Shown here piece after piece: positions 1,921 through 64,000 of a stretch of DNA of 64,000 bases. The stretch's first letter is position 1. Each line of letters opens with the position of its first letter. Position numbers and translations under genes: made by a program. The notes under the pieces are model-generated. The model did not search any database. It was not told where the DNA came from and worked only from the letters and a program-made list of their open reading frames with translations. The stretch lies in IMG/VR virus record IMGVR_UViG_3300024239_000011, positions 310,001-374,000 of that record. The stretch is one strand, 5' to 3'.

Positions 1921-1949
1921 CCAGGAATGTTTGAGTAGAGGGGTTGCGG

Positions 1950-3284
1950 ATGGTCTATTTTATTAACAAATACGATGGCACACAGGTAGCGGCAATTGCC
2001 GAAGGTGCAATGGACACCACCAGCACTTCATTGAAGTTGCTTGGGAGAAATTTTATCAACTATGGTGAGATCATCTCCGAGAACTTCGTTCATCTGATGG
2101 AGAATTTTGCCAGCCCAAACCCGCCTGCTGGGGTGCCATTATCTGGGCAGTTGTGGTTCAACACTACCGACAACAAAATGTATTTGTTTAATGGTACGAC
2201 TTGGGTTGTCGCCACCGCGATCAACGTGGGTAACACCGATGGTGATCCGAATAATAACGGGGATGGACCAAATGCATTACCACCGTCTGGTACAGCGGAA
2301 GGCGACCTCTATTGGGATGCCGATACGCAGCAGCTTTGGGGTTGGACCGAGATTGGCACCCCGCATTGGGTGTTGATTGGTCCGCCCGCACCGGACAGCG
2401 CAAATTCCAAGCTGGAATATCAGCAGATTGATGGTCATGATTGCCTTGTGATTACCATTGGTGGTCAATACATCGCCATCTGGTCAGCGGTATCGTTCAC
2501 TCCAACCACTGCTCCGTGGAATAGCATTTTCCCGGCTGCCGCTACCGGCGTTGAAGGTATTGTTGCCGGATTAACATTCCGCCGCGATGATATGAATAGT
2601 ATCAGAAGTGGTTCGCATTATCCGAGCAAGAACAATAGTTTCAACCTTGGTTCCGCGTCGTTGCGGTGGGATACACTGCATGCGCGTGTTGTAGTTGCTG
2701 ATAATATCCAGCAAACTGGTCAAGGAAGCATTGCTTTTAATAAATTCATGCGTACCGACCAAACCAATGTCCCCGATGTTAATGTGGCTTACGACCTTGG
2801 AAGCACAACGAATCGGTATTCAAAAGTTTACGCAACCGATTTCATGGGTACTTCCACCGCAACGCGCCTTGCCGACTTGGCAGAACGTTTTGCTGCGGAT
2901 GAGCCGATGGACGAAGGTACCGTTGTCAAGCTCGGGGGTTCCGCTGAAATTACCAAGACGACCGAAGCGGCAGATATCGATGTCCTCGGGGTGGTGTCCA
3001 CTCGTGCGGCATTCAAAATGAATGCCGAAGCTGGTGATGATAACTCCCATCCGTTCGTTGCTTTTGCTGGTCGAGTGCCATGCAAAGTTGTTGGTAAGGT
3101 CGAAAAGGGTGAACGTTTGATTACCTCCAATATTCCTGGGGTTGCTATTGGATTCAAAACAGCGTATCCGGAGATTGCTGGTTTTGGTACAAACCGCCAT
3201 GCGCTGGAAATTATTGGCCGTGCGCTTGAATGCAAAAACACTGACGAGGTGGGTTTGGTTATGATCGTGGTTGGTACGAAATAA
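1950..3284 (+). CDS. Tail fibre / baseplate-associated protein with C-terminal intramolecular-chaperone-like domain
   Basis: N-terminal LLGRNFINYGE..ENFVHLMENFA, repeats GQLWFNT..MYLFNGTTW and GDLYWD..LWGW, C-terminal ADLAERF..GTVV..VLGVVST..AGRVPCKV. Confidence 0.75.
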   Translation: MVYFINKYDGTQVAAIAEGAMDTTSTSLKLLGRNFINYGEIISENFVHLMENFASPNPPAGVPLSGQLWFNTTDNKMYLFNGTTWVVATAINVGNTDGDPNNNGDGPNALPPSGTAEGDLYWDADTQQLWGWTEIGTPHWVLIGPPAPDSANSKLEYQQIDGHDCLVITIGGQYIAIWSAVSFTPTTAPWNSIFPAAATGVEGIVAGLTFRRDDMNSIRSGSHYPSKNNSFNLGSASLRWDTLHARVVVADNIQQTGQGSIAFNKFMRTDQTNVPDVNVAYDLGSTTNRYSKVYATDFMGTSTATRLADLAERFAADEPMDEGTVVKLGGSAEITKTTEAADIDVLGVVSTRAAFKMNAEAGDDNSHPFVAFAGRVPCKVVGKVEKGERLITSNIPGVAIGFKTAYPEIAGFGTNRHALEIIGRALECKNTDEVGLVMIVVGTK

Positions 3285-6976: not shown

Positions 6977-8009
6977 TCTGTGCCGCAACGTCTCTATCAT
7001 CAATTTGTTGCTGACCAAAAAGTGCAACTACTCTTGCTCATATTGTCACCAGCTTCACAAAGACGATGTGCGACTTGCGGTATCACCACCCGAGCGTATC
7101 CACGAAATTGTGGAAAAGCTTGCTACGATCAATGATATCCCGAAGAACGTGCGATTTTTCGGCGGGGAAACGCTACTGCGTTTCCCCGATATCAAAGCCT
7201 ATTTTGAGGCATACCAACCGAACTATCCGGCACTGGGGTTTAGTGTTTATTCGAACGGATCACTCCTAACTCCTGACATGGGCGAATTCCTCGCCAAGAA
7301 CGGCGTAGACCTCACATTATCCATCGATGGGTATACAGAGGACGGTCAGCTTGAAAAGGACTATAAACGCCTAGAAACCGTCTTCCCGGCGATCTATCGC
7401 ATCTACGCCACTCACGGACGTATGATATCGGTGTCGGTGACCATCGACATTGCCAAAGTTCAGGCAGCGAAGAACCTGATGGTGTTGTTTACTCGGCGTT
7501 TTCCACGCACCAAACTTTTCATTTCTCCCGTTTTCCATTCGAAGGGTGATGGGAATACCCCATGGAGCATGGATGCGATTGATGACCTTCTGGGGTTTGT
7601 GGAGACCATCAACCAACAACGGGCAACACCGATCCTACAGGGATTGAATGTGATCTCATCGCCTCAGAAATGTATTAGCGTGGATTGGACATTGGCAGTG
7701 GACCTGTCGGGCGATCTGTCCAGTTGCTTCTTCACGATCACCGACAAGCTGACCTTCCCCGAGTACGTCTATGGGAACCTGTTGGACGACCGATTTGACG
7801 CGCCCCAATATGCTGCGATCTTGGAGCGGAAGCGTCAGATGTTCGACAACCCGTATTGCGCGGCATGCAGGTTCAAAGAAACCTGCATATCTTGCTCGAC
7901 GTGCGGGATGCTGTTCAACGAGAACCGGTGGTTCGAAAACGGCGAATGCAAGCCCTTGGTACATTTCTTGTCTGGGATGCATCACATGACCAGGGATGAA
8001 CCACTATGA
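6966..8009 (+). CDS. Radical SAM / SPASM-domain protein
   Basis: CNYSCSYC, FGGET, SNG, SIDG, CAACRFKETCISCSTC. Confidence 0.9.
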   Translation: MLTDLCRNVSIINLLLTKKCNYSCSYCHQLHKDDVRLAVSPPERIHEIVEKLATINDIPKNVRFFGGETLLRFPDIKAYFEAYQPNYPALGFSVYSNGSLLTPDMGEFLAKNGVDLTLSIDGYTEDGQLEKDYKRLETVFPAIYRIYATHGRMISVSVTIDIAKVQAAKNLMVLFTRRFPRTKLFISPVFHSKGDGNTPWSMDAIDDLLGFVETINQQRATPILQGLNVISSPQKCISVDWTLAVDLSGDLSSCFFTITDKLTFPEYVYGNLLDDRFDAPQYAAILERKRQMFDNPYCAACRFKETCISCSTCGMLFNENRWFENGECKPLVHFLSGMHHMTRDEPL

Positions 8010-9511: not shown

Positions 9512-10890
9512 TCATGGACAACCCTTTCAGTCAGGTCTATTGGATCAATCTGCTCCTGACTAATAAATGTAACAAGCAGTGTTCGTACTGCTATGAGCAG
9601 CATAAAGCCGAGTTTGAACGGTCGTACATCAATGCACATCGTGTGGATGAAATCTGCGCGAAGATGGACACCATGAACTCGCTTCAGAAAACCCTCCATT
9701 TTTTTGGCGGCGAACCCATGCTGAAGTTCGACACCATCATGGAGTACATGCGGGCATCGTCCCATAAATACCCCACATTGTCTTACGTGATTATCACCAA
9801 CGGCACGCTACTGACTCCTCAGAAATTCGAGGATTTCGTTTCGCACGGCGGCTCATTCTACATTTCCTGCGACGGCTGGGGGATCGATAACACTGACATC
9901 ACAACCAAGGATTTCAGTGCTATCAAGGATGTGGTTGAGGCATGCTTCCCGGTGGTCGCAGCCTATGATAAACGCATTACGTTCGACGTAGTTGTGCATC
10001 CCCGTGAGGTCGCGTCGTTCGGGCGGTTTATGCAGTACCTCGCCGGAAGTCCGCATTTCGAGCAAATCAATATCCACATCAAGCCATTGCTATACAGCAT
10101 GACCGATGGGTTGGTGCGCTGGGATGACGCAGCGATTAATCAATTCTTACAGGAATGTATGAATGCCATTGTGAAATCAAAGGGCATCAATTTCGAGATA
10201 GAAGGGTTCTACGAGAAGTCATGGGGCACGTGCATGACCATGGCAAACAACCTGAATGTTGATGTTGAGGGTAATTTTTCAGGGTGTTATTTTCTACTGA
10301 ACCAACATAAAGCCACCTCGGCATTCGATGATGCCATTTTTGGCAACATTCTAACCGGCGAGATTGATACTGCCAAAATCGCCAACTTTAAACGCCTGGA
10401 ACAGGAACTCTACCAGTCCTCTAAATGCCAATCTTGCGTATTGAACCCAAAATGCTTCCAGTGCAGTGCTGGACTGTACACAACCCTTGGAAAGTGGTAC
10501 GACAACGACAAGCATTGCGAAATCGTTATCCCATTCATCCAACGGTTGAATTCCTTCCAAGCCATGAAAGAGGATGCATATATCATTGGCTGCCTGAAGG
10601 AGAAAATCCAGGAACATGGGTCTGAGTGGTTTGTGACTCGCCTTAAGTATTGGACGACAGTTCACATGCAAGCGACGTTGCTGGAAATTTGTAATGCACA
10701 TATCCCAGCACAAAACATTATGGCGGGAAATGCGCCACTTGATTTGGGTCAGTGGCTCAGTGATGCGGGGGCAAAGCAAGTAGCAGAGCTTCATCACATT
10801 TTCACGCCTGCATTGGCTGATCTTTCTGCTCAAGATCAGTTTACGCTTTGCGTTGCGCGTGTGATTGAGAAAGAACATCCCAAAACCTAA
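9505..10890 (+). CDS. Radical SAM / SPASM-domain protein with C-terminal extension
   Basis: CNKQCSYC, FGGEP, ITNG, SCDG, CQSCVLNPKCFQC. Confidence 0.92.
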   Translation: MVIMDNPFSQVYWINLLLTNKCNKQCSYCYEQHKAEFERSYINAHRVDEICAKMDTMNSLQKTLHFFGGEPMLKFDTIMEYMRASSHKYPTLSYVIITNGTLLTPQKFEDFVSHGGSFYISCDGWGIDNTDITTKDFSAIKDVVEACFPVVAAYDKRITFDVVVHPREVASFGRFMQYLAGSPHFEQINIHIKPLLYSMTDGLVRWDDAAINQFLQECMNAIVKSKGINFEIEGFYEKSWGTCMTMANNLNVDVEGNFSGCYFLLNQHKATSAFDDAIFGNILTGEIDTAKIANFKRLEQELYQSSKCQSCVLNPKCFQCSAGLYTTLGKWYDNDKHCEIVIPFIQRLNSFQAMKEDAYIIGCLKEKIQEHGSEWFVTRLKYWTTVHMQATLLEICNAHIPAQNIMAGNAPLDLGQWLSDAGAKQVAELHHIFTPALADLSAQDQFTLCVARVIEKEHPKT

Positions 10891-12752: not shown

Positions 12753-13037
12753 ATGACGGCAGTATCGCAAAGAGAATTCGAGCGTATGGCGCAAGCAGTT
12801 TACCAACAGGAATTGAAAACTCCATGGTTTGCGCCAGTGGGGTTGATGCGCAGCATCAACCCCACGGACTACAATCCGTGTGCGGAGATTGCGTCGGTAC
12901 CTTATATAAGCCTTCAAACCCGACTGAAGATGGCGGGGCTTGATACGTTCGAGGTCGTATGTGACGAGCGGAACAACACCACCGAAACAAAGTCCAAGGT
13001 TGATTACTTGGCAGCTATTCGAGAGGTAGTGGGATAA
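12753..13037 (+). CDS. Mini-protein of tail-sheath-like motifs with C-terminal DYL tag
   Basis: PWFAPVGLMR and FEVVCDERNNT resemble conserved T4 gp18-family motifs. Ends KVDYLAAIREVVG. Confidence 0.6.
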   Translation: MTAVSQREFERMAQAVYQQELKTPWFAPVGLMRSINPTDYNPCAEIASVPYISLQTRLKMAGLDTFEVVCDERNNTTETKSKVDYLAAIREVVG

Positions 13038-13351: not shown

Positions 13352-13560
13352 GTTGGACGAAGCATGTTGTTTTCTTCACGCCATTGTATCCAGCACTTCC
13401 TTGTGTTCCGGTGAACCAAACAAAAATTCTCCTTACCCAGGAAATAATTGACCGGATGCGTCAGGCATATATACAACACAAAAAACAAGAACTACTAGAC
13501 GATTCTATCGTCTACCAGCACTCATCCCCACGAGGAAAGATCGAATATTATGAGCAATAA
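13348..13560 (+). CDS. Hypothetical protein, weak resemblance to a portal (gp20-family) segment
   Basis: ATGA-coupled ORF. KKQELLDDSIVY recalls the portal ELLEDxxxIYR motif. Confidence 0.45.
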   Translation: MSWTKHVVFFTPLYPALPCVPVNQTKILLTQEIIDRMRQAYIQHKKQELLDDSIVYQHSSPRGKIEYYEQ

Positions 13561-13762
13561 AATAATATGCCTGGAAATCCAGGCAGTGGGGCGTGGACTT
13601 CGTGAGGTTTCAGGGTATATCGAATTCGTTAATTTTACACCGTCATGTGACGACGATGTGGAACTGGAACGTCTCGCAAACGATATTGAATCCTTGGAAA
13701 CCATTGAAACCGAACAGGTTGATTATCTTGGTATTATCCGACAAGTCATTGGGTCTAAATAA
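13550..13762 (+). CDS. Small protein with C-terminal DYL tag
   Basis: Ends QVDYLGIIRQVIGSK. Confidence 0.6.
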   Translation: MSNKIICLEIQAVGRGLREVSGYIEFVNFTPSCDDDVELERLANDIESLETIETEQVDYLGIIRQVIGSK

Positions 13763-17219: not shown

Positions 17220-17579
17220 ATGAAGAAATTCTTGCTCGCAACCGTTTTGTTCTTCCCGTTGTTTGCCAACGCGGCAGATTTGGAACATACGCTGATTGTT
17301 GAAATGGGCTTTCAACATGCGGTCTCGGTGCCTGTTAGCGGATCGGAGGCGTGCAAGAATTTGGCGTTCGACATCTACGCGAAGAAGAATGGTAATAATG
17401 GCGCACCACGCGGGGCACAAACTCTTCGGGTTGGGTCTGCTAATGTTGATATTGGACAGCGTATCATCGACCCTTGGTTCTTCGATTGCGTCAACTCAAA
17501 ACTCGGTAAAATCACGCATAGCATTATGTGTGAAAAAGGCGAGTGCAGCGTCATTGAGTACAAGGGAGACATAAAATGA
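17220..17579 (+). CDS. Secreted 4-Cys small protein (paralog 3)
   Basis: Signal peptide ending FANA; EAC..DCVNSKLG..C...C. Confidence 0.65.
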   Translation: MKKFLLATVLFFPLFANAADLEHTLIVEMGFQHAVSVPVSGSEACKNLAFDIYAKKNGNNGAPRGAQTLRVGSANVDIGQRIIDPWFFDCVNSKLGKITHSIMCEKGECSVIEYKGDIK

Positions 17580-18169
17580 ACATTACCGGAGACACATTCA
17601 CTGCCGACGCCGAAGTTATCGAGTACGATTGTTTTCAAATTCCGATTTTCATTCATACCATCAAATCAGTGGCAGACCTTCGTGGTGGTTGGATGTTCGA
17701 AGATGGTATTCATTATGCGGTCAACGAGGTTCGGGATGAGAAGGCGCTTCGCAGCGTCCTCATTGAGAAACTGCACGAATCCTTGAATGATTTCAATGCT
17801 CCACCGGCTGGACATGTGCGGGGTGTGATTAACTCGGCGTTGTGCCATAGTAATCGGCTGACCCCGCATGATATTGACGAAATCTACGCCATGGGAATCA
17901 ATCCCATTCGATTTATCAATGGGGCATTGGTGATCTGGGGACAACGCATCGTCAACCGGGGTAGCCCCCAGAACATGTATTGGGACCGGGGTAGGGGGAA
18001 ATTTGACCTCAATCCATGGTTTGAGCAGTTCAGCACGACCACAAAGATACGTTGGGAGTTTCCCATGATTTGGGATATGTCGAAACTTTTGGCGTCCGCA
18101 CCCGCACCAGAAGCCCTGAAAACCGATTACCTTGCCGCCATCCATGACATCTGCAAGGCGGAACAATGA
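17576..18169 (+). CDS. Tail-sheath-fragment protein with C-terminal DYL tag
   Basis: PPAGHVRGVI..DEIYAMGINPIRFING..VIWGQR matches gp18-family PAG..RG..LY..GINP..V(I/L)WG. Ends KTDYLAAIHDICKAEQ. Confidence 0.7.
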   Translation: MNITGDTFTADAEVIEYDCFQIPIFIHTIKSVADLRGGWMFEDGIHYAVNEVRDEKALRSVLIEKLHESLNDFNAPPAGHVRGVINSALCHSNRLTPHDIDEIYAMGINPIRFINGALVIWGQRIVNRGSPQNMYWDRGRGKFDLNPWFEQFSTTTKIRWEFPMIWDMSKLLASAPAPEALKTDYLAAIHDICKAEQ

Positions 18170-18348
18170 GCCAGTATGGTTTTTATACGGCGATCACCTC
18201 GTCAGTAGTTGCATTGGTCAACACCGTGATCATGCAATTACTGCGACTGTGGTACGGGTTCGAAGCCATGATCGCTTACGGTGCAATTATCTTGCTGATC
18301 TGTATGACAATCATTTGGCAGATGTTCCGTAAAAAGGACAAGTCATGA
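18166..18348 (+). CDS. Small two-TM membrane protein
   Basis: Two hydrophobic segments and a basic tail. Confidence 0.55.
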   Translation: MSQYGFYTAITSSVVALVNTVIMQLLRLWYGFEAMIAYGAIILLICMTIIWQMFRKKDKS

Positions 18349-53349: not shown

Positions 53350-53378
53350 GAAAAGGGCGGGATTTCTCCCGCCCTTTT
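53350..53378. terminator. Bidirectional terminator
   Basis: aaaagggcggga-tttc-tcccgccctttt. Confidence 0.8.
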
Positions 53379-53790
53379 ACACTACGTCCCGAATGCATTG
53401 GAGGTAATCAACCGGTGCAAATACCGCATCAGATTCAATCTCGGTCGCCGCCAGTTTCATAAACTGACCATGGCGATCCTTGAGAACCTTGTAGCCATCA
53501 GGGCAGTCTTCGAGAATAAGATCGGGAATTGCAGACATTTCCCGTGGACCACGAATGGTACGTACTTCTTTGTCAGCGTGTCGTAAGAAATCAGTGGAAC
53601 GCACCATCAAGCACAGAGATTTCCGGTCTATTTGTGATTGAGTATGTGCGTTAAGAATGGTTTCCGCCATAGTATTGAAGGAGCGAACCCCAAAAAATCC
53701 AGCCGCACGAATTTCCCCTGCGGTAATCACCCTATAACGATCACCAAGCAGCCCCGTAACTTCTATTTGAGACAATAACCGCTGTGTCAT
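53377..53790 (-). CDS. Small protein with C-terminal DYL tag (paralog of 54097)
   Basis: Ends PVDYLQCIRDVV; IPDLIL..YKVLKDRHG. Confidence 0.6.
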   Translation of the reverse strand: MTQRLLSQIEVTGLLGDRYRVITAGEIRAAGFFGVRSFNTMAETILNAHTQSQIDRKSLCLMVRSTDFLRHADKEVRTIRGPREMSAIPDLILEDCPDGYKVLKDRHGQFMKLAATEIESDAVFAPVDYLQCIRDVV

Positions 53791-54113
53791 TCTACAACTT
53801 CCTTCGTGATTTGTAAAAAATCAACCCCATCCGCGATGGCTTCGTTAACCAGCTTTGCCCAGCGGTCGTCGTAATCGTGATCCGACCACCCGGCACACTC
53901 AGGCTGCCCACGGAGCCAATTCCGAACCTGCATACCTTCCCGGAAATGAACCGGGTGTGGAATGTAGGGACCGGACGGATTCATGGGATGGGTGGTCGAA
54001 ATGACCGGTGAAACCGTACCAAATTCCTTCTTGTAATCGCGGAAGAGGGAAATCCCATCATTCCCCAACCATTCTTTCAAACGTTGAATAAGCATCTTAG
54101 CCACCTTGTACAC
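53787..54113 (-). CDS. Small protein with C-terminal DFL tag
   Basis: HFREGMQVRNWLR; ends GVDFLQITKEVVE. Confidence 0.6.
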   Translation of the reverse strand: MYKVAKMLIQRLKEWLGNDGISLFRDYKKEFGTVSPVISTTHPMNPSGPYIPHPVHFREGMQVRNWLRGQPECAGWSDHDYDDRWAKLVNEAIADGVDFLQITKEVVE

Positions 54114-54480
54114 ATTGTTTGATACAATCTAAGTAGTCAACCGGAGGACGTAGGGCGGATTCCCATAATGTCCCCTCAACATCTCTCAATATTTTGTATC
54201 CAGTATATCCCCGCTGGATGACCAAATCCGGAATTTTTAATAATGGGACTATGAAAACCGGCACCACAAAGAGATCATCCGGGGCGCCGAAGTATGGGAT
54301 ATGAAGGCACAGTTTCTTACCCGATGTATGAGCCTCGTCATAATGCTCTTCAAGTGCCGGAACGGTATCGTGAGCCGTATGAATAAGTTCTCGGTATGAT
54401 ACCGTCAGGTACCGTTTCCCCATTAGACGATCTAATTCTGGTTGCGTTAGTATCCGGCGCATAACGTAGAATTCAAGCAT
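54097..54480 (-). CDS. Small protein with C-terminal DYL tag (paralog of 53377)
   Basis: Ends PVDYLDCIKQCVQGG; IPDLVI..YKILRD. Confidence 0.6.
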   Translation of the reverse strand: MLEFYVMRRILTQPELDRLMGKRYLTVSYRELIHTAHDTVPALEEHYDEAHTSGKKLCLHIPYFGAPDDLFVVPVFIVPLLKIPDLVIQRGYTGYKILRDVEGTLWESALRPPVDYLDCIKQCVQGG

Positions 54481-55438
54481 GAACGTTCTCGAACAGAGGG
54501 TTGAGATACCGTGCCACCTTGTCCTCATGCATGAACATGAGATCATATTCTTCGACCGGCTTCCCAAAGTAATATTTGATCACCTGAGGAAGGACGAAGA
54601 CTGGCACGTTACGGAATTTCGGGGTGGCACCATCCCATTCCTTGACGAAGAAATCATGGTCGGGATGGATACGACGCAACCAGAACGGCTCCACCCGTAA
54701 ATTGAATGCCCCCTCAACTTTATCACGGTACCGGCGGAACAACGATCCAGTGTGATTAGTGGAAGTAAGCTCCCAATCGCTGACAAAATCCTTCTCGCTG
54801 GACACAACAATCAGTTCATCAGACCCTAGCAGGCGTAAACGCTCTTCGGGGATTCCGGCTTCGATGACCGACTGCAACACATGGTTCAGCATCCACCGAT
54901 TGATGTGCTGCTGACGGGTAGGTGATAGTTTCCCGAAGATGGACTGCCGCAGGTTCTTTGACTTCGCGAAGTACGCCGGGTGGTCGGTGAATCTGCCTAC
55001 AAAATCCTCGTATGACGCACACCCATCCACAAAATCCGCATCAAAATACCGAAGCGACTGGAAATTTGCGGTTTTGATGTCGATGCTGATAAACAGCGTG
55101 TCCGCGTTCCCGGCATGATAAATGCCTTCCTGGCGCACCCCGAGGTCACGGACCTTCATCTTACCAATGAAGTCATCTTCATTCTTCGCGAAGGCTTGGT
55201 ACCGAGGCTTGTTTTCGACGTGGCTGATGATGCGATCTCGAAGATCAGCACCAGCCACGAAGAATTGTTCCTCACCGCCGTAGTGGTTCACCGCATCCAC
55301 CAGCAACTTGTAATACCCCTCCGTCGAATACAAGGGGTCATACAGTTCTAGATAGTATTCAAAGTACGGGTCGGTAAGAACCGGGATTTGAAGCGAAAAA
55401 TCCTTAACGAATCTACGCCGAGTCTGATCGGTTAGCAC
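54473..55438 (-). CDS. Hypothetical protein with polymerase-palm-like motifs
   Basis: FISIDIKTANF, SKNLRQSIFGKL, LGSDELIV. Confidence 0.55.
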   Translation of the reverse strand: MLTDQTRRRFVKDFSLQIPVLTDPYFEYYLELYDPLYSTEGYYKLLVDAVNHYGGEEQFFVAGADLRDRIISHVENKPRYQAFAKNEDDFIGKMKVRDLGVRQEGIYHAGNADTLFISIDIKTANFQSLRYFDADFVDGCASYEDFVGRFTDHPAYFAKSKNLRQSIFGKLSPTRQQHINRWMLNHVLQSVIEAGIPEERLRLLGSDELIVVSSEKDFVSDWELTSTNHTGSLFRRYRDKVEGAFNLRVEPFWLRRIHPDHDFFVKEWDGATPKFRNVPVFVLPQVIKYYFGKPVEEYDLMFMHEDKVARYLNPLFENVHA

Positions 55439-55528: not shown

Positions 55529-56743
55529 TTAGAAAGTATACCAATTCAACGGAATCAGATCGCGGATGCTCTCGATCTTGGTTGAGGTGCCTGTGTTCTT
55601 CAGCACGAAGTCACGGACCATAGCGAAGGCGTTCTTGCCATCCCAAACTTGGAACGACAACGGACGAAGGCGGCTGTCCAACTTCTGCGAAGCCCCCAGT
55701 GCGTATTCCTTCTTCGCCTGCTTTTCATCGCCGCCCACTGCCTTCAGAATCTCTTCTTTGGCGGTCGCGACGTAGGTTTCCAACTGCTTGGCTTGTTTGG
55801 CGATTTCATGGTTCAACGCATCGGTGAATGCACTCAGTCGGTTGCGATCAGCTTCCTCCATGAATGCCATGGCGTCATCCATACTCTCGCTGAGAACGAG
55901 TTCCCACACGTTCTTCTCAATGGCGATAAGTTCTTTCGCCTTGTGAATACGGCAGTAATGTTCGTTCTTGACCTTGTACATCCGCCCATCAGCAAAGCGG
56001 ATCACATAACCTTCGCCTTCAGTTTCCCCCTTTGTTCTCTCCAAGAAAGCCTGGATATCTGCAATACTCGACCCGAACACCTCGACTACCGGAATACCAA
56101 ACGGCTGTGCCATCTGCACCATGTCTTCATAGGGCACGTAGTAGCCCTTGATCATATGTCGAATAGCGGTCAACACCAGCATGTCTTCCGGGTAATCTAC
56201 GACAATTCTTTGTTTACGCGAACACCACTCAAAGATAGGGGTAAAGCCGTTCTCCAACATGGATGCCATGAAATTTACGTAGCCAATTTCATCATGCCCG
56301 AACGCAAATTCCTGCGCAGGGATAGCAACGTCAGTCGGACCCATCTTGGTGCAGAGGATCATCTTTCCGCCCAGAATCATGGGATGGATCATGCTGCCAT
56401 CCATCTTCGCCATGATGCGGAGATCAGACGACCAATTGACCTGATGCGGTTGAGTTTCCTCGCGTTCACCCACATTGAAGAATTTGTGATAAACACGTGC
56501 CAAAATCTTCCCCGTGGCAGAGCAGAACTTGATGCCACGAGCTTCCCGACGAACAATCGCCTTTAGACGATCACGGGGATCATCTATAGAAATCAAATCA
56601 GGGAAAGTATGGGCGAAGTTGACCGCGTAATTCACAACGGTAAAGCCGTCGCGCTCGCCTACAATCCACTCTTCACCACGGACGCCATTCTCGTCGGTCA
56701 ACGCCCACAACAGGTCGTCTATATGCTGTATTTGCGGAAACAC
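55529..56743 (-). CDS. T4 Rnl1-type RNA ligase
   Basis: REARGIKF, YHKFFNVGE, KMDGSMI, TPIFEW, EGYVI, YKVK. Confidence 0.9.
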   Translation of the reverse strand: MFPQIQHIDDLLWALTDENGVRGEEWIVGERDGFTVVNYAVNFAHTFPDLISIDDPRDRLKAIVRREARGIKFCSATGKILARVYHKFFNVGEREETQPHQVNWSSDLRIMAKMDGSMIHPMILGGKMILCTKMGPTDVAIPAQEFAFGHDEIGYVNFMASMLENGFTPIFEWCSRKQRIVVDYPEDMLVLTAIRHMIKGYYVPYEDMVQMAQPFGIPVVEVFGSSIADIQAFLERTKGETEGEGYVIRFADGRMYKVKNEHYCRIHKAKELIAIEKNVWELVLSESMDDAMAFMEEADRNRLSAFTDALNHEIAKQAKQLETYVATAKEEILKAVGGDEKQAKKEYALGASQKLDSRLRPLSFQVWDGKNAFAMVRDFVLKNTGTSTKIESIRDLIPLNWYTF

Positions 56744-56835
56744 CGAATCTCTCCTTATCAGATTCGGACAAATATATTGGAGAGCGTTCTTTGACTGTTA
56801 TTTCTTTCTTACGAAGTCAAAGTACCGGGTTTGGG

Positions 56836-56864
56836 TTGACCAAAATGCGTTCGATTGATATAAA
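56836..56864 (+). promoter_or_regulatory. Sigma70-type promoter
   Basis: TTGACC-17-TATAAA. Confidence 0.6.
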
Positions 56865-56893
56865 GACCCAAATTCTCACAATGGGCATGGACG

Positions 56894-58156
56894 ATGGAAT
56901 TCACCCCTCTTGAAATTCTCACCATTCTGCTTGGTATTTCGACCGCTTGTTATTCTGCGGTTCGAAAATTCACCAAGCTACCGCTGACCATCGGTATGGT
57001 CATGGCGTCGCTGGCTGCGTCTTACGGGATGATTGGGCTGGAAATGCTATTCCCCGGCTCGGGTATTCGCGCCATGGTCGAGGGCATCATCGGCAGCGGG
57101 AACTTCTCGAAGATCGTACTGGAATTCGCGCTGACCCCGTTGGTCTTTGCTACCGCGATGGAAGTGGACATCGACCAACTCAAGAGCCGGTGGAAATCCG
57201 TGCTGGTGCTTTCCACGGTCAGCGTGCTGATTTCCACCGCACTGTTCGGGATGCTGTTGCCTTCGGCTGCACTGATCGTGGGTAGCTCGATGACCGTGAT
57301 GGGCGCCTTGCTGCTTGGGTCGATGCAGTCGGCAACCGACCCGGTGGCGGTCAACGCGCTGCTGAAGGAACTCCCGTTCGTCCCCGACAGCCTCAAGATC
57401 AAAATTTCTGGTGAAAGCTTGGTCAATGATGGCGTTGCCGTTGTGGTCTACCTCGTCATGCTCTCGATGGCACAAGCTGCGGGAAATGCCGATCTGAGCT
57501 ACAGCCAAGCCGGGTGGTTGTTTGTTCAAGAAGCTGGCGGGGGGCTGGTCATCGGTGGGTTGGTCGCCGCCTTTATTTACCGTTGGACAAAAGCGCATGA
57601 CGAAGGTGAACTGGAATTCCTAATCACGCTGTTCGGTGTTCTGATCCTGATCGTGGTCGGTATCCGTTTGCACGTCAGCGCGCCGCTTGCTGCCCTGGTG
57701 GTGGGGATCGTGATTGGAAATTGGGGTGTTCGTTTCGCCATGAGCGATACCACTCATCAAGTCGTCCACACAGTCTGGCGGGTGATTGACGTAACTCTGA
57801 ATGCGATCCTGTTCACGCTGATCGGCACCGTCGTGATCATCATCAACCATGACGCCAAACATGTGTTGTTCTCAGTTGCCGCAATCGCCGTGTCGCTGGT
57901 GGCGCGGTTTGTATCGGTGGCAATACCGCTCAAACTGCTTGGATGGTTTACCAATGAAAAACCCACCAAAGGTGCGACCCGTGTGTTGACTTGGGGCGGT
58001 TTACGAGGTGGTATTCTGGTGGCGTTGGCGCTGTCATTACCCGACACCATCCCCGGCAAGAGCTACATTCTCGCGGGTGCTTACGGTATCGTTCTATGGA
58101 CCATCATCGTCCAAGGGCTAACCGTGAAATGGCTAATCCTGCGAGTGGTCAAGTAG
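56894..58156 (+). CDS. CPA1-family Na+/H+ antiporter (NhaP-like)
   Basis: SATDPVAV, GESLVNDG, WGGLRG; about 12 TM segments. Confidence 0.92.
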   Translation: MEFTPLEILTILLGISTACYSAVRKFTKLPLTIGMVMASLAASYGMIGLEMLFPGSGIRAMVEGIIGSGNFSKIVLEFALTPLVFATAMEVDIDQLKSRWKSVLVLSTVSVLISTALFGMLLPSAALIVGSSMTVMGALLLGSMQSATDPVAVNALLKELPFVPDSLKIKISGESLVNDGVAVVVYLVMLSMAQAAGNADLSYSQAGWLFVQEAGGGLVIGGLVAAFIYRWTKAHDEGELEFLITLFGVLILIVVGIRLHVSAPLAALVVGIVIGNWGVRFAMSDTTHQVVHTVWRVIDVTLNAILFTLIGTVVIIINHDAKHVLFSVAAIAVSLVARFVSVAIPLKLLGWFTNEKPTKGATRVLTWGGLRGGILVALALSLPDTIPGKSYILAGAYGIVLWTIIVQGLTVKWLILRVVK

Positions 58157-58670: not shown

Positions 58671-59258
58671 TTACGGACGCTTCGAGATCACGTCGTCAAC
58701 CAGACCCAGCGCCTTCGCCTCTTCGGCTGACAGAAACGTATCGCGGTCCAACTTGTCTTCCCATACCTCAAGGGCAACGCCGGTATGTTCGGCATACTTC
58801 TTGGTCAGCTTGTCCTTGATGTTCTGAATTTCCTTCGCCTGGATTTGGATGTCACTACACATACCACCAGCACCACCGGACGGCTGGTGTACCATGACGC
58901 GAGCATTTGGCAGGATGAAACGCTTACCCTTAGCACCAGCCATGAGTAAGAACGAACCCATCGATGCTGCCTGACCAATACACACAGTTGAGACATCCGG
59001 CTTGATGAACTGCATCGTGTCGTAAATGGCAAGACCGGAGGTTACTACACCGCCCGGTGAATTGATGTACATATGAATGTCCGCGTTCGGATCATCACTC
59101 TCCAAGAAAAGAAGCTGGGCACAAACCAGTTCAGCAGTGTGGTCATCAATAGCACCATTGATGAACAGCACTCGTTCTTTCATCAATCTGCTGAAAAGAT
59201 CGTAGCTGCGTTCACCGCGACCACTCTGTTCAACAACAATCGGAACAAGATTCGACAT
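58671..59258 (-). CDS. clpP: ATP-dependent Clp protease proteolytic subunit
   Basis: YDLFSRL, YINSPGG, AASMGS, MVHQP, DRD. Confidence 0.97.
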
Positions 59259-59363: not shown

Positions 59364-60656
59364 TTAAGACCCACCGTTCGACGGGATATATGGCACAGTA
59401 GTCCCAAACGGAGCTTCAATCTTGCTTCCCTTGTTATTAATAATGAACAAGGTGTCGCAGAAATAAGGATCACCCCATCCTTTATTTGGCAATCCATCAG
59501 TAAACATGACGAACTGCTCTGGTACCATATCCATTCGACGCATAAATTCCCAATTTGCCTCGAATCGGGTACCACCACCACCTTTCACCCATTGATAATC
59601 GAACATCGTGTCAGCGTTGTCCGGGGTGAAAATGTGATAGCTGTCCTTGTAGACTTTGGTGTCAAACGACCAGATATGGATTTTGTAGTCCGGGAACTGA
59701 TCCATAATTCCTTTCGTTTCCGTCAGAAAATCACGAATCATTTCCTCGGTAATACTAGCAGATGCATCAATACCAACGTGGATTTCAATAGTGTCCTCGT
59801 AGATCATACCGGGAAGAATGATTCCGAGGTGAGCGCACTTACGGCTTGGCTTGGTGTAGCTGTAATCCTCTTTGACAAGGCTCTGTACTGTGCGATTGAG
59901 CATTTGGCGCCAGTCAAGCTGCGGATCAGCGATATCCGCAATTAGGCGTCGTAAAGACGCCGGGACAGCACCAGCCCCGACCACCTGAGCCGCATTGATC
60001 ATGGCGTTCCGTATTTCGTTGCGGACTTGCTGCAACTCTTCCTCGGACATTTCCGGCGGACCATTACCGTCGCCTTGGATACGAACCTTGACTTTCTTCT
60101 GCCCACTTCCGGTATCGGCGCCTAGGTCAAGATGCATGTCCATCGTCATTTCGACTTCAACGCCACGCTTCTTCAGGTCTTCATAAACCTGCTCGGACGA
60201 CCACGGCTCGGGGAACATGAACCGTTCATCGTACAGCCCGACGCGCTGGACCTTACCATCCTTGTCCTTGCTGTCCTTGTCCTTGACCCGCAATTTCTCG
60301 CGAACCGGCATGCTTCCGATGTCTTCCTTCATCAGCATGCCGTTCACAACGTAATCGTTGGCGTTGTTCCACAGCCCCGGATCACGTTCGCCCCGCCGCC
60401 CGAAGTGGTCGAGAATGCAATGCCCGACCTCATGTACCAATACGAACACAAGTTCAGGCTTGGTCAGTGACGCCACAAATTCCGGATTGTAATAGAGTTT
60501 GCGGAAATCGGTTGCCATGGTGGGGCACCAATCACTCGCTTCCTCAAGCTCCATATGGGAAATGATGTTCCCAAAGAACGTGTGCTTGAAAAGCAGATGC
60601 GTCTTGGCAAACACAATCTGTTTTTCAATCTCATCCTTGAACAAATTCGAAGTCAT
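59364..60656 (-). CDS. DUF2201-type metallopeptidase plus VWA-like protein
   Basis: TMATD, HEVGH, WNNANDYVVN; VWA IDASAS, FDT, GGGTRF, FTDG. Confidence 0.88.
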   Translation of the reverse strand: MTSNLFKDEIEKQIVFAKTHLLFKHTFFGNIISHMELEEASDWCPTMATDFRKLYYNPEFVASLTKPELVFVLVHEVGHCILDHFGRRGERDPGLWNNANDYVVNGMLMKEDIGSMPVREKLRVKDKDSKDKDGKVQRVGLYDERFMFPEPWSSEQVYEDLKKRGVEVEMTMDMHLDLGADTGSGQKKVKVRIQGDGNGPPEMSEEELQQVRNEIRNAMINAAQVVGAGAVPASLRRLIADIADPQLDWRQMLNRTVQSLVKEDYSYTKPSRKCAHLGIILPGMIYEDTIEIHVGIDASASITEEMIRDFLTETKGIMDQFPDYKIHIWSFDTKVYKDSYHIFTPDNADTMFDYQWVKGGGGTRFEANWEFMRRMDMVPEQFVMFTDGLPNKGWGDPYFCDTLFIINNKGSKIEAPFGTTVPYIPSNGGS

Positions 60657-60657
60657 A

Positions 60658-60861
60658 TTACCAACCTTCGGAAATTACATCTCTGATCAACGTTAGATAA
60701 TTGATACTGTCGTTTTTAGGCGACGCAAACACTACCCATTTACACCCATCAAACAAATAAAGGTTTCCATCTATTGTGTTGAGGTAAACGTCATTGCGGG
60801 TAGGTGATGGCAAGTGTTCAGCAGACGGCGTGTGATAAGTAATTGTTTCAATGATCATCAA
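60658..60861 (-). CDS. Mini-protein: one tail-fibre repeat plus C-terminal NYL tag
   Basis: NDVYLNTIDGNLYLFDGCKWVV matches GQLWFNTTDNKMYLFNGTTWVV of the fibre at 1950. Ends INYLTLIRDVISEGW. Confidence 0.65.
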   Translation of the reverse strand: MMIIETITYHTPSAEHLPSPTRNDVYLNTIDGNLYLFDGCKWVVFASPKNDSINYLTLIRDVISEGW

Positions 60862-62192
60862 GTTGCTTTCGTGGCTTTGTACCGATTGTACTCTATATGT
60901 GCTTCGTCTTCAGTAAATCTATGCTTATTACTATCATAGATCATGTATTGAAATGCATATCCATTTCCTATAACCGCCTCTCGTTTGGCGTTATTTCGAG
61001 GAAAACTATCCCCAAACGTGAACACACTTTTCACTTCAATGATCAGCTTTTCGGATGGTACATAAATGTCAGGATGATACAAACGTTCACGACCCATATA
61101 ATTGTAGCGGAAAGATGGTACATCTTTTCCAAAATAAAGGAGTTGTTCTTGGTAATGCATTAAGAGATCGTCACATGCCCAATCTTCATACCCCTGAACC
61201 TTGATAACCTTTCCTGAGGGCAACACGTAGTCTTTGTTACGATAGCAACCCTTCCTCGTTGCGTCCCACCATGCATCACTTCGGATCATGGTTCGAAAAG
61301 CATCAGTATGAGCGAAATGTTCGACCCCATAACGGTCGAGCATCGTGCGGCGTGCTTTGATGAATACACTACCACCCGTCCGCATGCAATTTTCACCATA
61401 TACTTGACGCCGAGTTGCCATCATTTTCGTTGAGAATTGTTGCCGAACTCCATCATCCTTGTATTTCTCAATCATTATTTCAGAACGATGTGTTTTTGCA
61501 CTGGGGCATTCTTGGTAATATGGCGAACAACACCATTTCGAGTTGTCGTACCCAGATGTCATGAGTTCATAATGCGCTGCCTGCCCACAGCCGTAATCAC
61601 AAACATGATTGCTATTCTCATGAAATACCCCTTCGCGTTTTTTACCACGTAATGCTTCGCTGATTTTGCGTCCGTAGCCGGGGCAATCCGATATTTGTTC
61701 TACACATCGCCATTGCCACGTTACTTCACTGAAATGCGTCCCGGTTGCCCCACAGTGCGCGCAAATCGGCGGTGGGATTTCACGAGCATTCAACTGTCCA
61801 GGGTTGGTTACGCCATATCGTTCGACCAGCGTCTTTTCAATTTTGTCCCGAACCTCCGGGGTGCGTTGGGCAAATTCATCACCGTACCGATCCCGGTTGG
61901 TTGCTTTTCGCTTCTCAAGAGTTTGTGTATTCGTAGCCGCGCATTTCTCCGAACAATACCGGGAGTACCCTTTATCTCGACCCGGCACTTTCCACTGCGT
62001 GGCGCTTCCACACGTCGGGCAACACGGAATGTCATCACCATGGATCACGTGCCAACATTTTCGCTGCAAACACCAATCATCGGGATACATCACCAAATAG
62101 GTCGCAAGTTCTTCCCAGTGATCCCACTTAGGAAGGTTGTACCATTTCATACGATTTGACGTATTAAGGTAATCAATAAGACGCGATTTCAT
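60858..62192 (-). mobile_element. Putative homing endonuclease (zinc fingers, RYG repeats, PD-(D/E)XK nuclease)
   Basis: Repeats ERYGV/DRYG; VQGYE, YHPDIY..IIEVKS. TATAAATA at 62236-62243 overlaps a 14-bp hairpin at 62203-62238. Confidence 0.75.
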
Positions 62193-62252
62193 GGTGTTCT
62201 CCATAGTCAGGTGGACTTTTAGTTGTCCACCTGACTATTTATACAACTTCCG

Positions 62253-63362
62253 TCAAGCTTCTAATATAAGTTCTTCGTATTTATCAGAAAACCACTCCCA
62301 GTTGCGCATCAAATCCGGCATAAACGGTAGGTTCTCTGACTTCAACGCGATACGTACAGCCAGGATGATCATTTCGCGCTGGAAGTTCTTGTCCACGAAA
62401 GCGAGGAAGTTGTCAGCCATTTCGAACCACGGCGTCAAATCGCTGCGGTCCTGGGCAAGCTTCAACTGCTTCTTCAACTCGTAGCACAGCGAAGTGGTCA
62501 GCGAATACTTCACATCAAGACGGAGATCGGAGGGGATCGTCTTACGTTCACCAGTAAGAATGGTGATGGCGCGCGGTAGCTTGACCGTGTGACGCAGAAC
62601 CGCCATGAAACGCAGGGCGGCGGCATCACCGACGCAACCAGCGATCCACTTCAGAAGGTCTTCGTCCTGCTGGGGCGACATTTCTTCCGTGAATTCTTCG
62701 TCCCACAGCGCCTCGGACACGAACGACCATGTGCGAGGGGTCTGGAAACCACGGCTGGCAGAGCGAGGATTGAACTGGAAAAGATCGTCTTCTTTGGCGC
62801 TCAAATAACCAACCACGTCCGGATGGATGCCGTTTTCATATGCCCACTTCTGCCAATCCGGGAACCAACGCATAAGCTCAAAATGTACCAGACGGTTGGC
62901 AAGGGCGCTCGGCATGCTAACCGCAACAGCGCGGTCAGATTCGCGGTTACCAGCGGCTAGGAGGGCGCAATTCGGCGGGAGGTGGTATTCACCGATCTTG
63001 CGATCCAACACCCACTGTAGCGCCGCGCCCATGACCATCTTCGGGGCAGCGTTGATTTCGTCCAAGAAAATGATTGCGGAGCTATCGGGATCATCCGGCA
63101 ATTCGCTCGGATGTGCGTATTCCATCTTGTTGGTTTTTGGGTTGTAGAACGGAATGCCGCGAAGGTCGCTGGCTTCCTTGAGCAGCAAACGAATATCAAT
63201 GACCGGACGGTTCTGTTCTATTGCAATCTGCTTAACGATATCAGATTTGCCTAGACCCGGCGGACCCCAGATCATAGCAGGACGCTTGAGGCGAATCGAC
63301 TTGCGTAGCTGGCGCTTCAACGCGCTGGGGATAACGCGAAGAGGTTCGTGCGACGTACTCAT
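62253..63362 (-). CDS. MoxR-like AAA+ ATPase
   Basis: WGPPGLGKS, DLRGIP, FLDEIN, AAGNR, ALANR, TPRTW. Typical partner of DUF2201/VWA proteins. Confidence 0.9.
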   Translation of the reverse strand: MSTSHEPLRVIPSALKRQLRKSIRLKRPAMIWGPPGLGKSDIVKQIAIEQNRPVIDIRLLLKEASDLRGIPFYNPKTNKMEYAHPSELPDDPDSSAIIFLDEINAAPKMVMGAALQWVLDRKIGEYHLPPNCALLAAGNRESDRAVAVSMPSALANRLVHFELMRWFPDWQKWAYENGIHPDVVGYLSAKEDDLFQFNPRSASRGFQTPRTWSFVSEALWDEEFTEEMSPQQDEDLLKWIAGCVGDAAALRFMAVLRHTVKLPRAITILTGERKTIPSDLRLDVKYSLTTSLCYELKKQLKLAQDRSDLTPWFEMADNFLAFVDKNFQREMIILAVRIALKSENLPFMPDLMRNWEWFSDKYEELILEA

Positions 63363-63455
63363 TAAAAATCCTTCCACCAAATGCCATGCGGTAAACCCGC
63401 GCAAACAGTTGATGGAGGATCACATAGCCGGTAATCCGGTGTCACTAAACTTTTT

Positions 63456-64000
63456 TTACTTGAATTCGCGCACAAATTCTAAGAAATCATCAGCGGGCAT
63501 CGGGCGTGCAAAGTAATATCCTTGAACAATGCGGACGTTATGCTGACGCATAAAATCAATTTGTGCTTCTGTTTCCACACCTTCTGCAACCATTTCGAGA
63601 TCAAGACTTTTGGCAATGGAAATAATCGCCTCGACTAACTTGGTATTTCCAGAAAGCACTTTATCAACAAACGATTTATCAATCTTCAAAACGTCTAGTG
63701 GAAATTCTGATAGATAGGCAAGGCTAGACCACCCAGTACCAAAATCGTCAATCGCGATGGTAACACCCAACTTACGCAGATGACGCAATACCGTAATGGC
63801 ATTGTGCTGGTTGCTCATAAAACTACTTTCGGTAATTTCCAGTTCAAGATTGGCTGGTGAAATTCCAGTTTCCAACAAGACATCACGAACATTACGTTCA
63901 AGTGAATTATGGACAAACTGTTGCGGTGCAACGTTCACTGCTAATTTAAGATCGATGCCATGTCCAGATAATACTTTGGCAAACTCACACGCTTTCCGCA
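63456..64000 (-). CDS. EAL-domain c-di-GMP phosphodiesterase (5' part outside window)
   Basis: AVNV, LELEITES, IAIDDFGTG, LKIDKSFV, VAEGVET, QGYYFARP. Frame open to the window edge. Confidence 0.93.
   Translation of the reverse strand, partial: RKACEFAKVLSGHGIDLKLAVNVAPQQFVHNSLERNVRDVLLETGISPANLELEITESSFMSNQHNAITVLRHLRKLGVTIAIDDFGTGWSSLAYLSEFPLDVLKIDKSFVDKVLSGNTKLVEAIISIAKSLDLEMVAEGVETEAQIDFMRQHNVRIVQGYYFARPMPADDFLEFVREFK

What the first reader, a model, noticed from the sequence alone, without database searches (positions are those of the whole stretch)
60658..60861. 67-aa gene consisting of one tail-fibre repeat plus the DYL-type tag, inside the MoxR-VWA-ClpP gene run
Seen within the window: NDVYLNTIDGNLYLFDGCKWVV aligns with GQLWFNTTDNKMYLFNGTTWVV of the fibre at 1950-3284 and is followed directly by INYLTLIRDVI. 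This is the cleanest example of the virion-fragment-plus-tag design, and it needs no outside homology. Its position between the AAA+ ATPase and the VWA-metallopeptidase, just upstream of clpP, hints at the tag receptor.
Basis: partly seen in the sequence, partly recalled or inferred. Interest (0 to 1): 0.7.

Follow-up and report, generated by a model that had tools for sequence, protein, structure and literature searches.

The report
Small fibre-hairpin gene with shared C-terminal tag
A 66-residue gene of an uncultured 543-kb T4-like giant phage joins one tail-fibre-type beta-hairpin to a C-terminal helix that at least 12-14 small proteins of this phage share, but it lies beside the AAA+/VWA/ClpP genes only because it rides on an inserted homing-endonuclease cassette, so its position says nothing about what reads the tag.

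Summary
The ORF (window 60658-60858, minus strand; 66 aa from the ATG, 67 from the TTG) has a segment that matches the N-terminal motif of the fibre at 1944-3284. No shuffle out of 2000 reaches the alignment score (p about 1e-5).

The "DYL tag" is real. An HMM of it finds 12-14 ORFs in the 543-kb genome, every hit 0-3 residues from the C-terminus. Reversed ORFs and the closest cultured relative (Sinorhizobium phage Phosso) give none. Synonymous codons differ between copies, so selection acts on the peptide. In an ortholog of one tagged gene that is only 49% identical overall, 13 of 13 tag residues are identical.

The positional reading fails. A 448-aa homing-endonuclease-like gene (DUF7487, phrog_3339) lies between the AAA+ gene and this ORF and overlaps it by ATGA. 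In 32 of 45 relatives the AAA+ and VWA genes are adjacent, and the other 13 carry assorted inserts. The cassette is invariant between strains while its flanks diverge.

The other tagged genes include a catalytically dead paralog of the gp21 prohead protease and two genes directly after the portal gene, where T4 has core genes 67 and 68. My best guess, at moderate confidence, is a C-terminal prohead-core (capsid-targeting) address. No binding evidence was obtained.

The parts
60658..60858 (-). orf67: 66 aa from the ATG at 60858 (the TTG at 60861 gives 67 aa). Stop codon at 60658-60660.
   Evidence: ATGA overlap with the upstream stop and 1 nt before the VWA start. An identical protein is called on 11 metagenome contigs.
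60721..60804 (-). Residues 19-46: fibre-type beta-hairpin motif. The AF2 model gives three strands at 23-27, 32-36 and 41-45.
   Evidence: p about 1e-5 against two fibre-like proteins. (E 2e-5 against a collagen-like fibre of another phage). (secondary structure). (structural look-alikes are Mtd_N / PTL_trimer clusters, leads only).
60661..60705 (-). Residues 52-66: the C-terminal 'DYL' tag (here NYL..IRDVI..GW), predicted as a helix at 52-64.
   Evidence: tag HMM, E 5e-7 for this ORF. (conserved as amino acids, with varied codons)..
60858..62204 (-). Homing-endonuclease-like gene: 448 aa, or 444 aa from the second ATG, which has a GGAG ribosome-binding site. The C-terminal part carries a PD...E-V-K nuclease-type motif.
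   Evidence: DUF7487, E 7e-39. (phrog_3339 'homing endonuclease', E 6e-16). (three paralogs in the genome, one at E 2e-125 to phrog_3339). (gene calls of 444 or 448 aa).
62206..62243 (-). TATAAATA box (62236-62243) followed by an 11-bp-stem hairpin (62206-62235), just upstream of the endonuclease gene. This is a possible T4-type late promoter with a regulatory hairpin.
   Evidence: ATAAATA boxes also precede the portal and fibre genes. A gp55-like late sigma factor is encoded. Function is inferred, not shown.
62253..63404 (-). MoxR-like AAA+ ATPase gene, upstream flank of the insertion.
   Evidence: AAA_5; phrog_1297, E 3e-86.
59364..60656 (-). VWA / putative metallopeptidase gene (DUF2201_N + DUF2201), downstream flank. 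Its 5' part (60192-60544) differs by about 12% between strains.
58671..59258 (-). clpP gene.
   Evidence: CLP_protease, E 7e-80.
2133..2216 (+). The matching motif in the 446-aa fibre (gene 1944-3284).
   Evidence: Pfam DUF7360 hits exactly this stretch, E 5.5e-4, below the cut-off.
12753..13037 (+). Tagged ORF, 94 aa.
   Evidence: E 9e-6; not in the HMM seed.
13550..13762 (+). Tagged ORF, 70 aa.
   Evidence: E 6e-8.
17576..18169 (+). Tagged ORF, 197 aa. Its ortholog in a related strain is 49% identical overall with an identical tag.
53377..53790 (-). Tagged ORF, 137 aa.
   Evidence: E 2.5e-6.
53787..54113 (-). Weakly tagged ORF, 108 aa (DFL variant of the tag).
   Evidence: E 1.6 with the seed HMM. 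It is a row of alignment A1, so its score with the 14-row HMM is not independent.
54097..54567 (-). Weakly tagged ORF, up to 156 aa, a paralog of 53377-53790.
   Evidence: E 0.15; paralogy, E 0.002.

Best explanation
orf67 is a real, lineage-specific small gene of an uncultured T4-like giant phage. Its nearest cultured relatives are Sinorhizobium phage Phosso and Agrobacterium phage Atu_ph07.

Shown:
- It is the second gene of a two-gene cassette and is coupled to a free-standing homing-endonuclease-like gene by an ATGA overlap.
- The cassette sits inside the normally contiguous AAA+/VWA gene pair.
- The protein has two modules. One is a three-stranded beta-hairpin of the type found near the N-terminus of this phage's fibre proteins. 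The other is a C-terminal amphipathic helix of consensus (V/I)DYLxAIRD(I/V)VGG.
- At least 12-14 otherwise unrelated small proteins (46-197 aa) of this phage carry that helix at their extreme C-terminus.

Inferred:
- The helix is an address label that brings these proteins to one common partner. Most likely it works as a C-terminal analogue of the T4 capsid-targeting sequence and directs its bearers into the prohead core or capsid interior.
- Its I-x-(D/E) triplet resembles the L/I-x-E site of gp21-type prohead proteases.
- orf67 would then be made late from the cassette's own promoter. It would possibly trimerise through the hairpin and be carried into, or act at, the assembling head.
- The neighbouring AAA+, VWA and ClpP genes are not implicated.

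The confidence figure applies to the inferred function. The shown points are much firmer.
For: Gene reality and packing.

Fibre motif.

Tag family:
- the motif recurs in C-terminal tails.
- the 8-seed HMM finds 4 more ORFs at E<1e-3, all 0-2 residues from the end.
- 12 or 14 hits at E<1e-3, against 0 in reversed ORFs and 0 in Phosso.
- synonymous codons vary.
- the ortholog pair is 49% identical with the tag 13/13 identical, while 10 neighbouring gene pairs are 80-97% identical.

Cassette:
- endonuclease family and paralogs, found beside the major capsid gene, the late sigma factor and a polymerase fragment.
- 32 of 45 relatives have AAA+ and VWA adjacent.
- the inserts in the other relatives are heterogeneous.
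- 0 differences in 1726 bp of cassette, against 55 in the 1293-bp VWA gene.

Head link:
- the tagged 144-aa ORF is a paralog of the true gp21-type protease (E 4e-16) with the catalytic His and Ser replaced. Its tag aligns with the segment that closes the protease domain.
- tagged 155-aa and 66-aa ORFs directly follow the portal gene.
- T4 has core genes 67 and 68 in that position.

Literature:
- PMC9026906: the T4 core holds gp21, gp22, gp67, gp68 and the internal proteins. The targeting sequence is a 10-residue peptide, with residues 4 and 7 needed for targeting and 8 and 10 for cleavage. Asp at position 10 blocks cleavage but still allows targeting. gp21 and Alt are also processed at the C-terminus.
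- PMC8442874: the peptide is MKTYQEFIAE. The tag core DYLxAIRD matches it at Y4, I8 and the acidic position 10.

Late-promoter-like boxes.
Against: - No experiment or model shows binding. The complex job gave no verdict.
- The T4 targeting sequence is N-terminal, whereas this tag is C-terminal.
- The acidic position is Asp in 8 tags and Glu in only 3.
- The true protease, scaffold and capsid proteins of this phage do not carry the tag.
- T4 gp67, gp68, gp21 and gp22 do not carry the tag.
- Phosso, which shares the head module, has no tag and no homologs of the tagged genes.
- Most tagged genes are not in the head module.
- The match to the T4 peptide covers three positions and could be chance.
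- Expression is unproven.
Confidence: 0.4

Rival explanations
1. The tag is read by the neighbouring machinery: the MoxR-type AAA+/VWA pair handles tagged clients, or the tag is a degron that delivers them to the phage ClpP.
For: - The ORF lies between the AAA+ and VWA genes, about 1.4 kb upstream of clpP.
- The phage also encodes a ClpA/B-type two-ring ATPase at about 433 kb.
- AAA+/VWA followed by ClpP recurs in two distant relatives, L012 and L019.
Against: - The ORF is there through an endonuclease cassette insertion.
- The 13 other tagged genes are scattered from 42 kb to 386 kb.
- 45 relatives with the AAA+/VWA pair have no orf67, and IMG/VR has no exact tag core.
- The last 1-4 residues of the tags vary (GGV, GSK, EGW, VV and others), unlike ssrA-type degrons, which need a fixed terminus.
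Confidence: 0.1
2. The tag docks its bearers onto some other common hub, either a host protein or a phage factor that is neither head nor Clp. The tagged proteins would then be a rapidly evolving set of takeover or defence-related effectors.
For: - The bodies of the tagged proteins are small, diverse and fast-evolving while the tag is fixed.
- Most have no family match.
- The set is lineage-specific.
Against: - Two members are tied to head genes.
- No candidate hub was identified.
- No large replication or transcription protein carries the tag.
Confidence: 0.25
3. orf67 is a hitchhiking remnant: a piece of a fibre gene fused to a tag-bearing tail, carried by the endonuclease cassette without a function of its own.
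For: - No homolog exists outside this phage species.
- It contains only one hairpin of a fibre.
- It sits in a mobile cassette.
- The AF2 model has low confidence, mean pLDDT 61.
Against: - The frame is intact and tightly packed, with start-stop overlap.
- A 66-aa paralog of the same two-module build sits in the portal operon.
- The tag is under purifying selection where that can be measured.
Confidence: 0.15

Closest known systems
T4 capsid-targeting sequence (CTS) of internal proteins IPI-III and Alt
   Same: - A short peptide shared by otherwise unrelated small proteins of a T4-type phage with a gp21-type protease.
- An aromatic residue, then an aliphatic one four residues later, then an acidic one two residues after that: Y4, I8, E10 in the T4 peptide and Y, I, D/E in the tag.
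- The bodies of the carriers evolve fast, as the T4 internal proteins do (PMC9026906).
   Different: - The tag is C-terminal, not N-terminal.
- The acidic residue is mostly Asp.
- There is no sequence homology to T4 proteins.
- Neither targeting nor cleavage has been shown.
C-terminal targeting tails of HK97-type prohead proteases and encapsulin cargo-loading peptides (from my own knowledge, not checked here)
   Same: A short C-terminal peptide carries diverse cargo to the inside of an HK97-fold shell. One bearer here is a protease paralog.
   Different: No sequence likeness. The receptor is unknown. The capsid here is T4-type with a separate scaffold core.
Free-standing homing endonuclease genes of T4-like phages (seg, mob; for example segD beside gene 23 in T4)
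   Same: - An intergenic insertion between conserved genes that are adjacent in relatives.
- Several paralogs beside core genes.
- A late-promoter-like box with a hairpin upstream.
- The cassette is invariant while its flanks are mosaic.
   Different: - The nuclease family is DUF7487 with a PD-(D/E)xK-like motif, not GIY-YIG or HNH.
- The cassette carries a second, translationally coupled small gene.
- Cleavage activity and the target site are unknown.
Fibre N-terminal hairpin motif (Pfam DUF7360; structural look-alikes Mtd_N and PTL_trimer)
   Same: The hairpin of orf67 aligns with the motif at residues 60-90 of three fibre-like proteins of this phage and with a collagen-like fibre of another phage.
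   Different: orf67 lacks the conserved 60-residue N-terminal domain and the whole shaft and tip. No Pfam model reaches it, even at E 10.
Diverged prohead-protease paralogs of giant phages (SPN3US and relatives, PMC5694885)
   Same: The tagged 144-aa ORF is a diverged, catalytically dead paralog of the prohead protease. Short paralogs of this kind are common, with 1554 hits.
   Different: None of the 15 relatives inspected ends in the tag.

Membership tests
T4-type capsid-targeting sequence | An N-terminal propeptide of about 10 residues | tested here: not met
   The motif lies 0-3 residues from the C-terminus in all 14 ORFs.
T4-type capsid-targeting sequence | Ends in the gp21 cleavage motif L/I-x-E | tested here: inconclusive
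   At the position of the L/I-x-E triplet the 14 tags read [I/V/T/A]-x-D in 8, -x-E in 3, -x-Q in 2 and -x-A in 2. In T4, Asp at this position blocks cleavage but still allows targeting (PMC9026906).
T4-type capsid-targeting sequence | The phage has a gp21-type protease and a T4-type head module | tested here: met
   Peptidase_S77 at E 7e-24 and Gp23 at E 5e-81. Portal by phrog_213 at E 2.5e-116.
T4-type capsid-targeting sequence | The peptide suffices to carry a foreign protein into the head | not testable with these tools
   Needs fusion and encapsidation experiments.
Free-standing homing endonuclease cassette | Encodes a nuclease of a homing-endonuclease family | tested here: met
   phrog_3339 'homing endonuclease' at E 6e-16, with a paralog at E 2e-125. 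DUF7487 at E 7e-39. A PD...E-V-K motif in the C-terminal part. This rests on annotation and profiles only.
Free-standing homing endonuclease cassette | Inserted between genes that are contiguous in relatives | tested here: met
   32 of 45 relatives have a gap of 107-188 nt. Here the gap is 1596 nt.
Free-standing homing endonuclease cassette | Cuts the endonuclease-free allele and spreads by repair | not testable with these tools
   No empty-site allele was seen in four runs. An invariant cassette with divergent flanks fits this feature but does not prove it.
Pfam DUF7360 / fibre N-terminal motif | Match to the family profile above its cut-off | tested here: not met
   orf67 has no Pfam hit at E up to 10. 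The parent fibre itself scores 20.1 bits against a cut-off of 27.6. The likeness rests on pairwise and phrog_8309 evidence.
ssrA-type Clp degron | Conserved residues at the very C-terminus | tested here: not met
   The last 1-4 residues differ in nearly every tag. The conserved core ends at the Gly.
Encapsulin-type or HK97-protease-type C-terminal cargo peptide | The C-terminal peptide binds the inner face of the shell protein | not testable with these tools
   The single complex job gave no verdict.

The most novel reading that the evidence does not exclude
This giant T4-like phage has evolved a C-terminal address peptide, derived from the segment that closes its own prohead protease domain. 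The peptide would load a fast-evolving set of about 14 small proteins into the prohead. That set includes decoy-like pieces of the phage's own virion proteins (a dead protease and single fibre hairpins). One such cargo gene, orf67, would be spread between genomes by a homing-endonuclease cassette.
Probability: 0.25. Interest if true: 0.7.

Novelty: new variant of a known kind. Interest (0 to 1): 0.5.

Why it matters
If the tag is a portable head-loading or hub-docking peptide, it marks out a whole set of otherwise unannotatable small proteins in an uncultured 543-kb phage. It would also give a 12-residue handle to test: fuse it to a reporter and ask where the reporter goes.

It would extend the T4 idea of a shared targeting peptide to the other end of the protein and to a distant branch of T4-like giant phages.

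The case is also a caution. A gene's neighbours can be an accident of mobile-element insertion, so a receptor should not be inferred from adjacency alone.

Tried and rejected
- Complex prediction (capsid protein + true protease + orf67): no verdict, score 0.00. This is evidence neither for nor against binding.
- Homolog search for orf67 in 5.8 billion proteins: only itself. The same result for the portal-adjacent 155-aa tagged protein.
- Exact back-translated tag core in IMG/VR: 0 matches.
- Tag profile through the genome search on Phosso: the first look found nothing. I therefore fetched the whole record and ran HMMER myself, and there was still no tag.
- Endonuclease relatives in IMG/VR: one weak locus, no use for synteny.
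- Metagenome scan with the VWA protein: only the genome itself plus relatives mostly around 40% identical (up to about 57% over partial matches). No intermediate relative and no empty site.
- Expression: the only run labelled RNA is probably DNA and does not cover the ORF.
- PDB sequence searches: nothing.
- Megablast against cultured phages: nothing.
- DNA-repeat explanation for the tag: rejected, because codons differ at synonymous sites in every copy.
- Sliding-clamp motif, FtsZ C-terminal peptide mimic and membrane-targeting helix: considered from memory only. Set aside because no large replication protein carries the tag, the conserved parts do not line up, and the tag is acidic rather than basic.
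- TATAAATA as a genome-wide late promoter: only weakly enriched (10 and 23 copies against 10 expected per strand), so the box upstream of the cassette is only suggestive.

Full report
**What the window is.** The window is bases 310001-374000 of a 543,035-bp virus record. The genome has a T4-type head module:
- a Gp23-family capsid gene and a Peptidase_S77 (gp21-type) protease;
- a portal gene;
- a gp55-like late sigma factor.

By protease identity, the nearest cultured phages are Sinorhizobium phage Phosso (69%) and Agrobacterium phage Atu_ph07 (57%). Megablast against cultured phages finds nothing.

**The observation.**
- The probable start is the ATG at 60858, giving 66 aa. It overlaps the stop of the upstream gene as ATGA.
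- The stop lies one base before the ATG of the VWA gene.
- Public gene calls use the 66-aa form, and the identical protein is on 11 metagenome contigs.

Residues 18-43 align with residues 64-89 of the 446-aa fibre at 1944-3284.
- The Smith-Waterman score is 67. None of 2000 shuffles reaches it (maximum 50), and the Gumbel p is about 1e-5.
- A second fibre-like protein (genome 491276-492019) scores the same.
- Against all 6282 ORFs of the genome the E-values are 1e-3 and 3e-3. One jackhmmer round adds a third fibre-like protein just upstream of the window.
- In the fibre the motif is the stretch that Pfam DUF7360 hits, below its cut-off.
- phrog_8309 hits both the fibre and the ORF.
- The same hairpin occurs between collagen repeats in a fibre of an unrelated phage (E 2e-5).
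- A single-sequence AF2 model gives three strands (23-45) and a helix (52-64), at low confidence (pLDDT 61).
- Atlas structural neighbours are Mtd_N and 'phage tail-like trimerisation' clusters, which are leads only.

**The tag.**
- Scanning C-terminal tails for [DN]YL found eight ORFs with an extended common motif.
- An HMM of those eight finds four further ORFs at E<1e-3 and two weaker ones. Every one lies 0-3 residues from the C-terminus.
- Controls are clean, with no hit below E 0.1 in reversed ORFs or in the 5150 ORFs of Phosso.
- The consensus is (V/I)DYLxAIRD(I/V)VGG. The hydrophobic residues fall at i, i+1, i+4, i+7 and i+8, which is one face of a helix.
- Codons differ at synonymous sites in all copies, so the peptide is what is conserved, not a DNA repeat.
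- A related strain provides the one available test of selection. The ortholog of the tagged 197-aa gene (window 17576-18169) is 49% identical overall, and 13 of 13 tag residues are identical. Ten neighbouring gene pairs are 80-97% identical.
- orf67 has a 66-aa paralog with the same hairpin end and the same ..GW terminus (E 0.001).

**Why the ORF is where it is.** Between the AAA+ gene (62253-63404) and orf67 lies a 448-aa gene. It matches DUF7487 (E 7e-39) and phrog_3339 'homing endonuclease', and it has a PD...E-V-K motif.
- Three paralogs sit elsewhere in the genome: beside the capsid gene, beside the late sigma factor and beside a polymerase fragment. T4 likewise has segD beside gene 23.
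- Among 45 IMG/VR relatives with both genes, 32 have the AAA+ and VWA genes 107-188 nt apart.
- The other 13 carry inserts of 0.3-2.5 kb. These include NUMOD3/GIY-YIG-type endonucleases, a radical SAM gene and a collagen-like fibre. None has orf67.
- Between strains, a 1726-bp tract (60545-62270) holding the endonuclease gene and orf67 has no difference at all. The VWA gene has 55 differences in 1293 bp, mostly synonymous and densest at 60192-60544. The end of the AAA+ gene also varies.
- Upstream of the endonuclease gene lie a TATAAATA box and an 11-bp hairpin. ATAAATA boxes also precede the portal and fibre genes.

I read this as a free-standing homing-endonuclease cassette with orf67 as its passenger. 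Its place next to the AAA+, VWA and ClpP genes is therefore incidental.

**What the tag may do.** Two links point to the head.
- First, the tagged 144-aa ORF (genome 133735-134169) is a paralog of the true prohead protease (E 4e-16). The catalytic His and Ser are replaced. Its tag aligns with the segment that closes the protease domain..SAPEAYPRAVYEAL.. in the true enzyme.
- Second, the tagged 155-aa and 66-aa ORFs directly follow the portal gene. T4 has prohead-core genes 67 and 68 in that position.

In T4, unrelated internal proteins share a 10-residue targeting peptide, MKTYQEFIAE.
- Residues 4 and 7 serve targeting, and residues 8 and 10 serve cleavage at L/I-x-E.
- Asp at position 10 still allows targeting.
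- gp21 and Alt are also processed at the C-terminus (PMC9026906, PMC8442874).
- The tag core DYLxAIRD matches the peptide at Y4, I8 and the acidic position 10.

This is a three-position resemblance, not homology. T4 gp67, gp68, gp21 and gp22 have no such tag, and the tag is at the opposite end of the protein. I therefore put 'C-terminal prohead-core address' first, at moderate confidence. The Clp/MoxR idea keeps some weight because the phage also encodes a ClpA/B-type ATPase.

**Limits.**
- No close relative with a diverged orf67 exists in the searched collections, so selection on orf67 itself cannot be measured.
- Expression could not be checked.
- The complex prediction gave no verdict.

**Verdict.** The positional inference is not supported. 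The function remains a hypothesis that simple fusion and pull-down experiments could settle.

Noticed in passing
genome 133735-134169 (outside the window; L062:3735-4169, minus strand): A 144-aa catalytically dead paralog of the gp21-type prohead protease. Short paralogs of this kind (about 120-150 aa) are widespread in metagenomes, with 1554 hits at E<=1e-3. None of the 15 inspected carries the tag.
   Followed up: partly
window 17576-18348, compared with L098: The tagged 197-aa gene and the small gene after it are about 50% identical between two strains, while the surrounding genes are 80-97% identical. This is a local divergence hotspot.
   Followed up: partly
window 59397-60544 and 62271-62295: Patches of dense, mostly synonymous strain differences flank the invariant endonuclease cassette. 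Two alleles coexist within single samples.
   Followed up: partly
L052:3576-5414 (minus strand): In a distant relative, the gap between the AAA+ and VWA genes holds a 612-aa collagen-repeat fibre protein that carries the same hairpin motif as orf67 (11 of 20 identical). This may be coincidence, or fibre-type genes may tend to land at this site.
   Followed up: partly
genome about 433292-434623 (L181): A ClpA/B-type AAA_2 ATPase in a 761-aa open frame, far from clpP. The phage may therefore encode a complete Clp protease system.
   Followed up: no
L004 (ENA contig k141_178484): The same sequence, 100% identical over 9 kb, lies on an 869,618-bp contig. The 543-kb record may be incomplete, or the longer contig may be a concatemer or misassembly.
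   Followed up: no
window 8006-10890: Two adjacent radical SAM genes (501 and 461 aa) sit just downstream of the fibre gene block.
   Followed up: no
window 55529-58156 and 63456-63998: A T4 Rnl1-type RNA ligase, a Na+/H+ exchanger and an EAL (GGDEF-EAL in L004) signalling gene border the AAA+/VWA/ClpP run. These are unusual auxiliary genes for a phage.
   Followed up: no
L184:2412-3974, beside L184:4022-5182: A 520-aa ORF matches only the C-terminal part of a polymerase profile and sits next to an endonuclease paralog. It may be a polymerase gene split by a mobile element.
   Followed up: no
genome 70604-71008: A 134-aa paralog of the tagged ORF at window 53377-53790 (E 3e-9). It ends in ..ELAARRITGAAR, which looks like a decayed tag.
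   Followed up: no
P0007: A strain variant of the dead-protease paralog is 93% identical up to residue 104 and then departs completely. This pattern fits a frameshift that would remove the tag, though it may be an assembly error.
   Followed up: no
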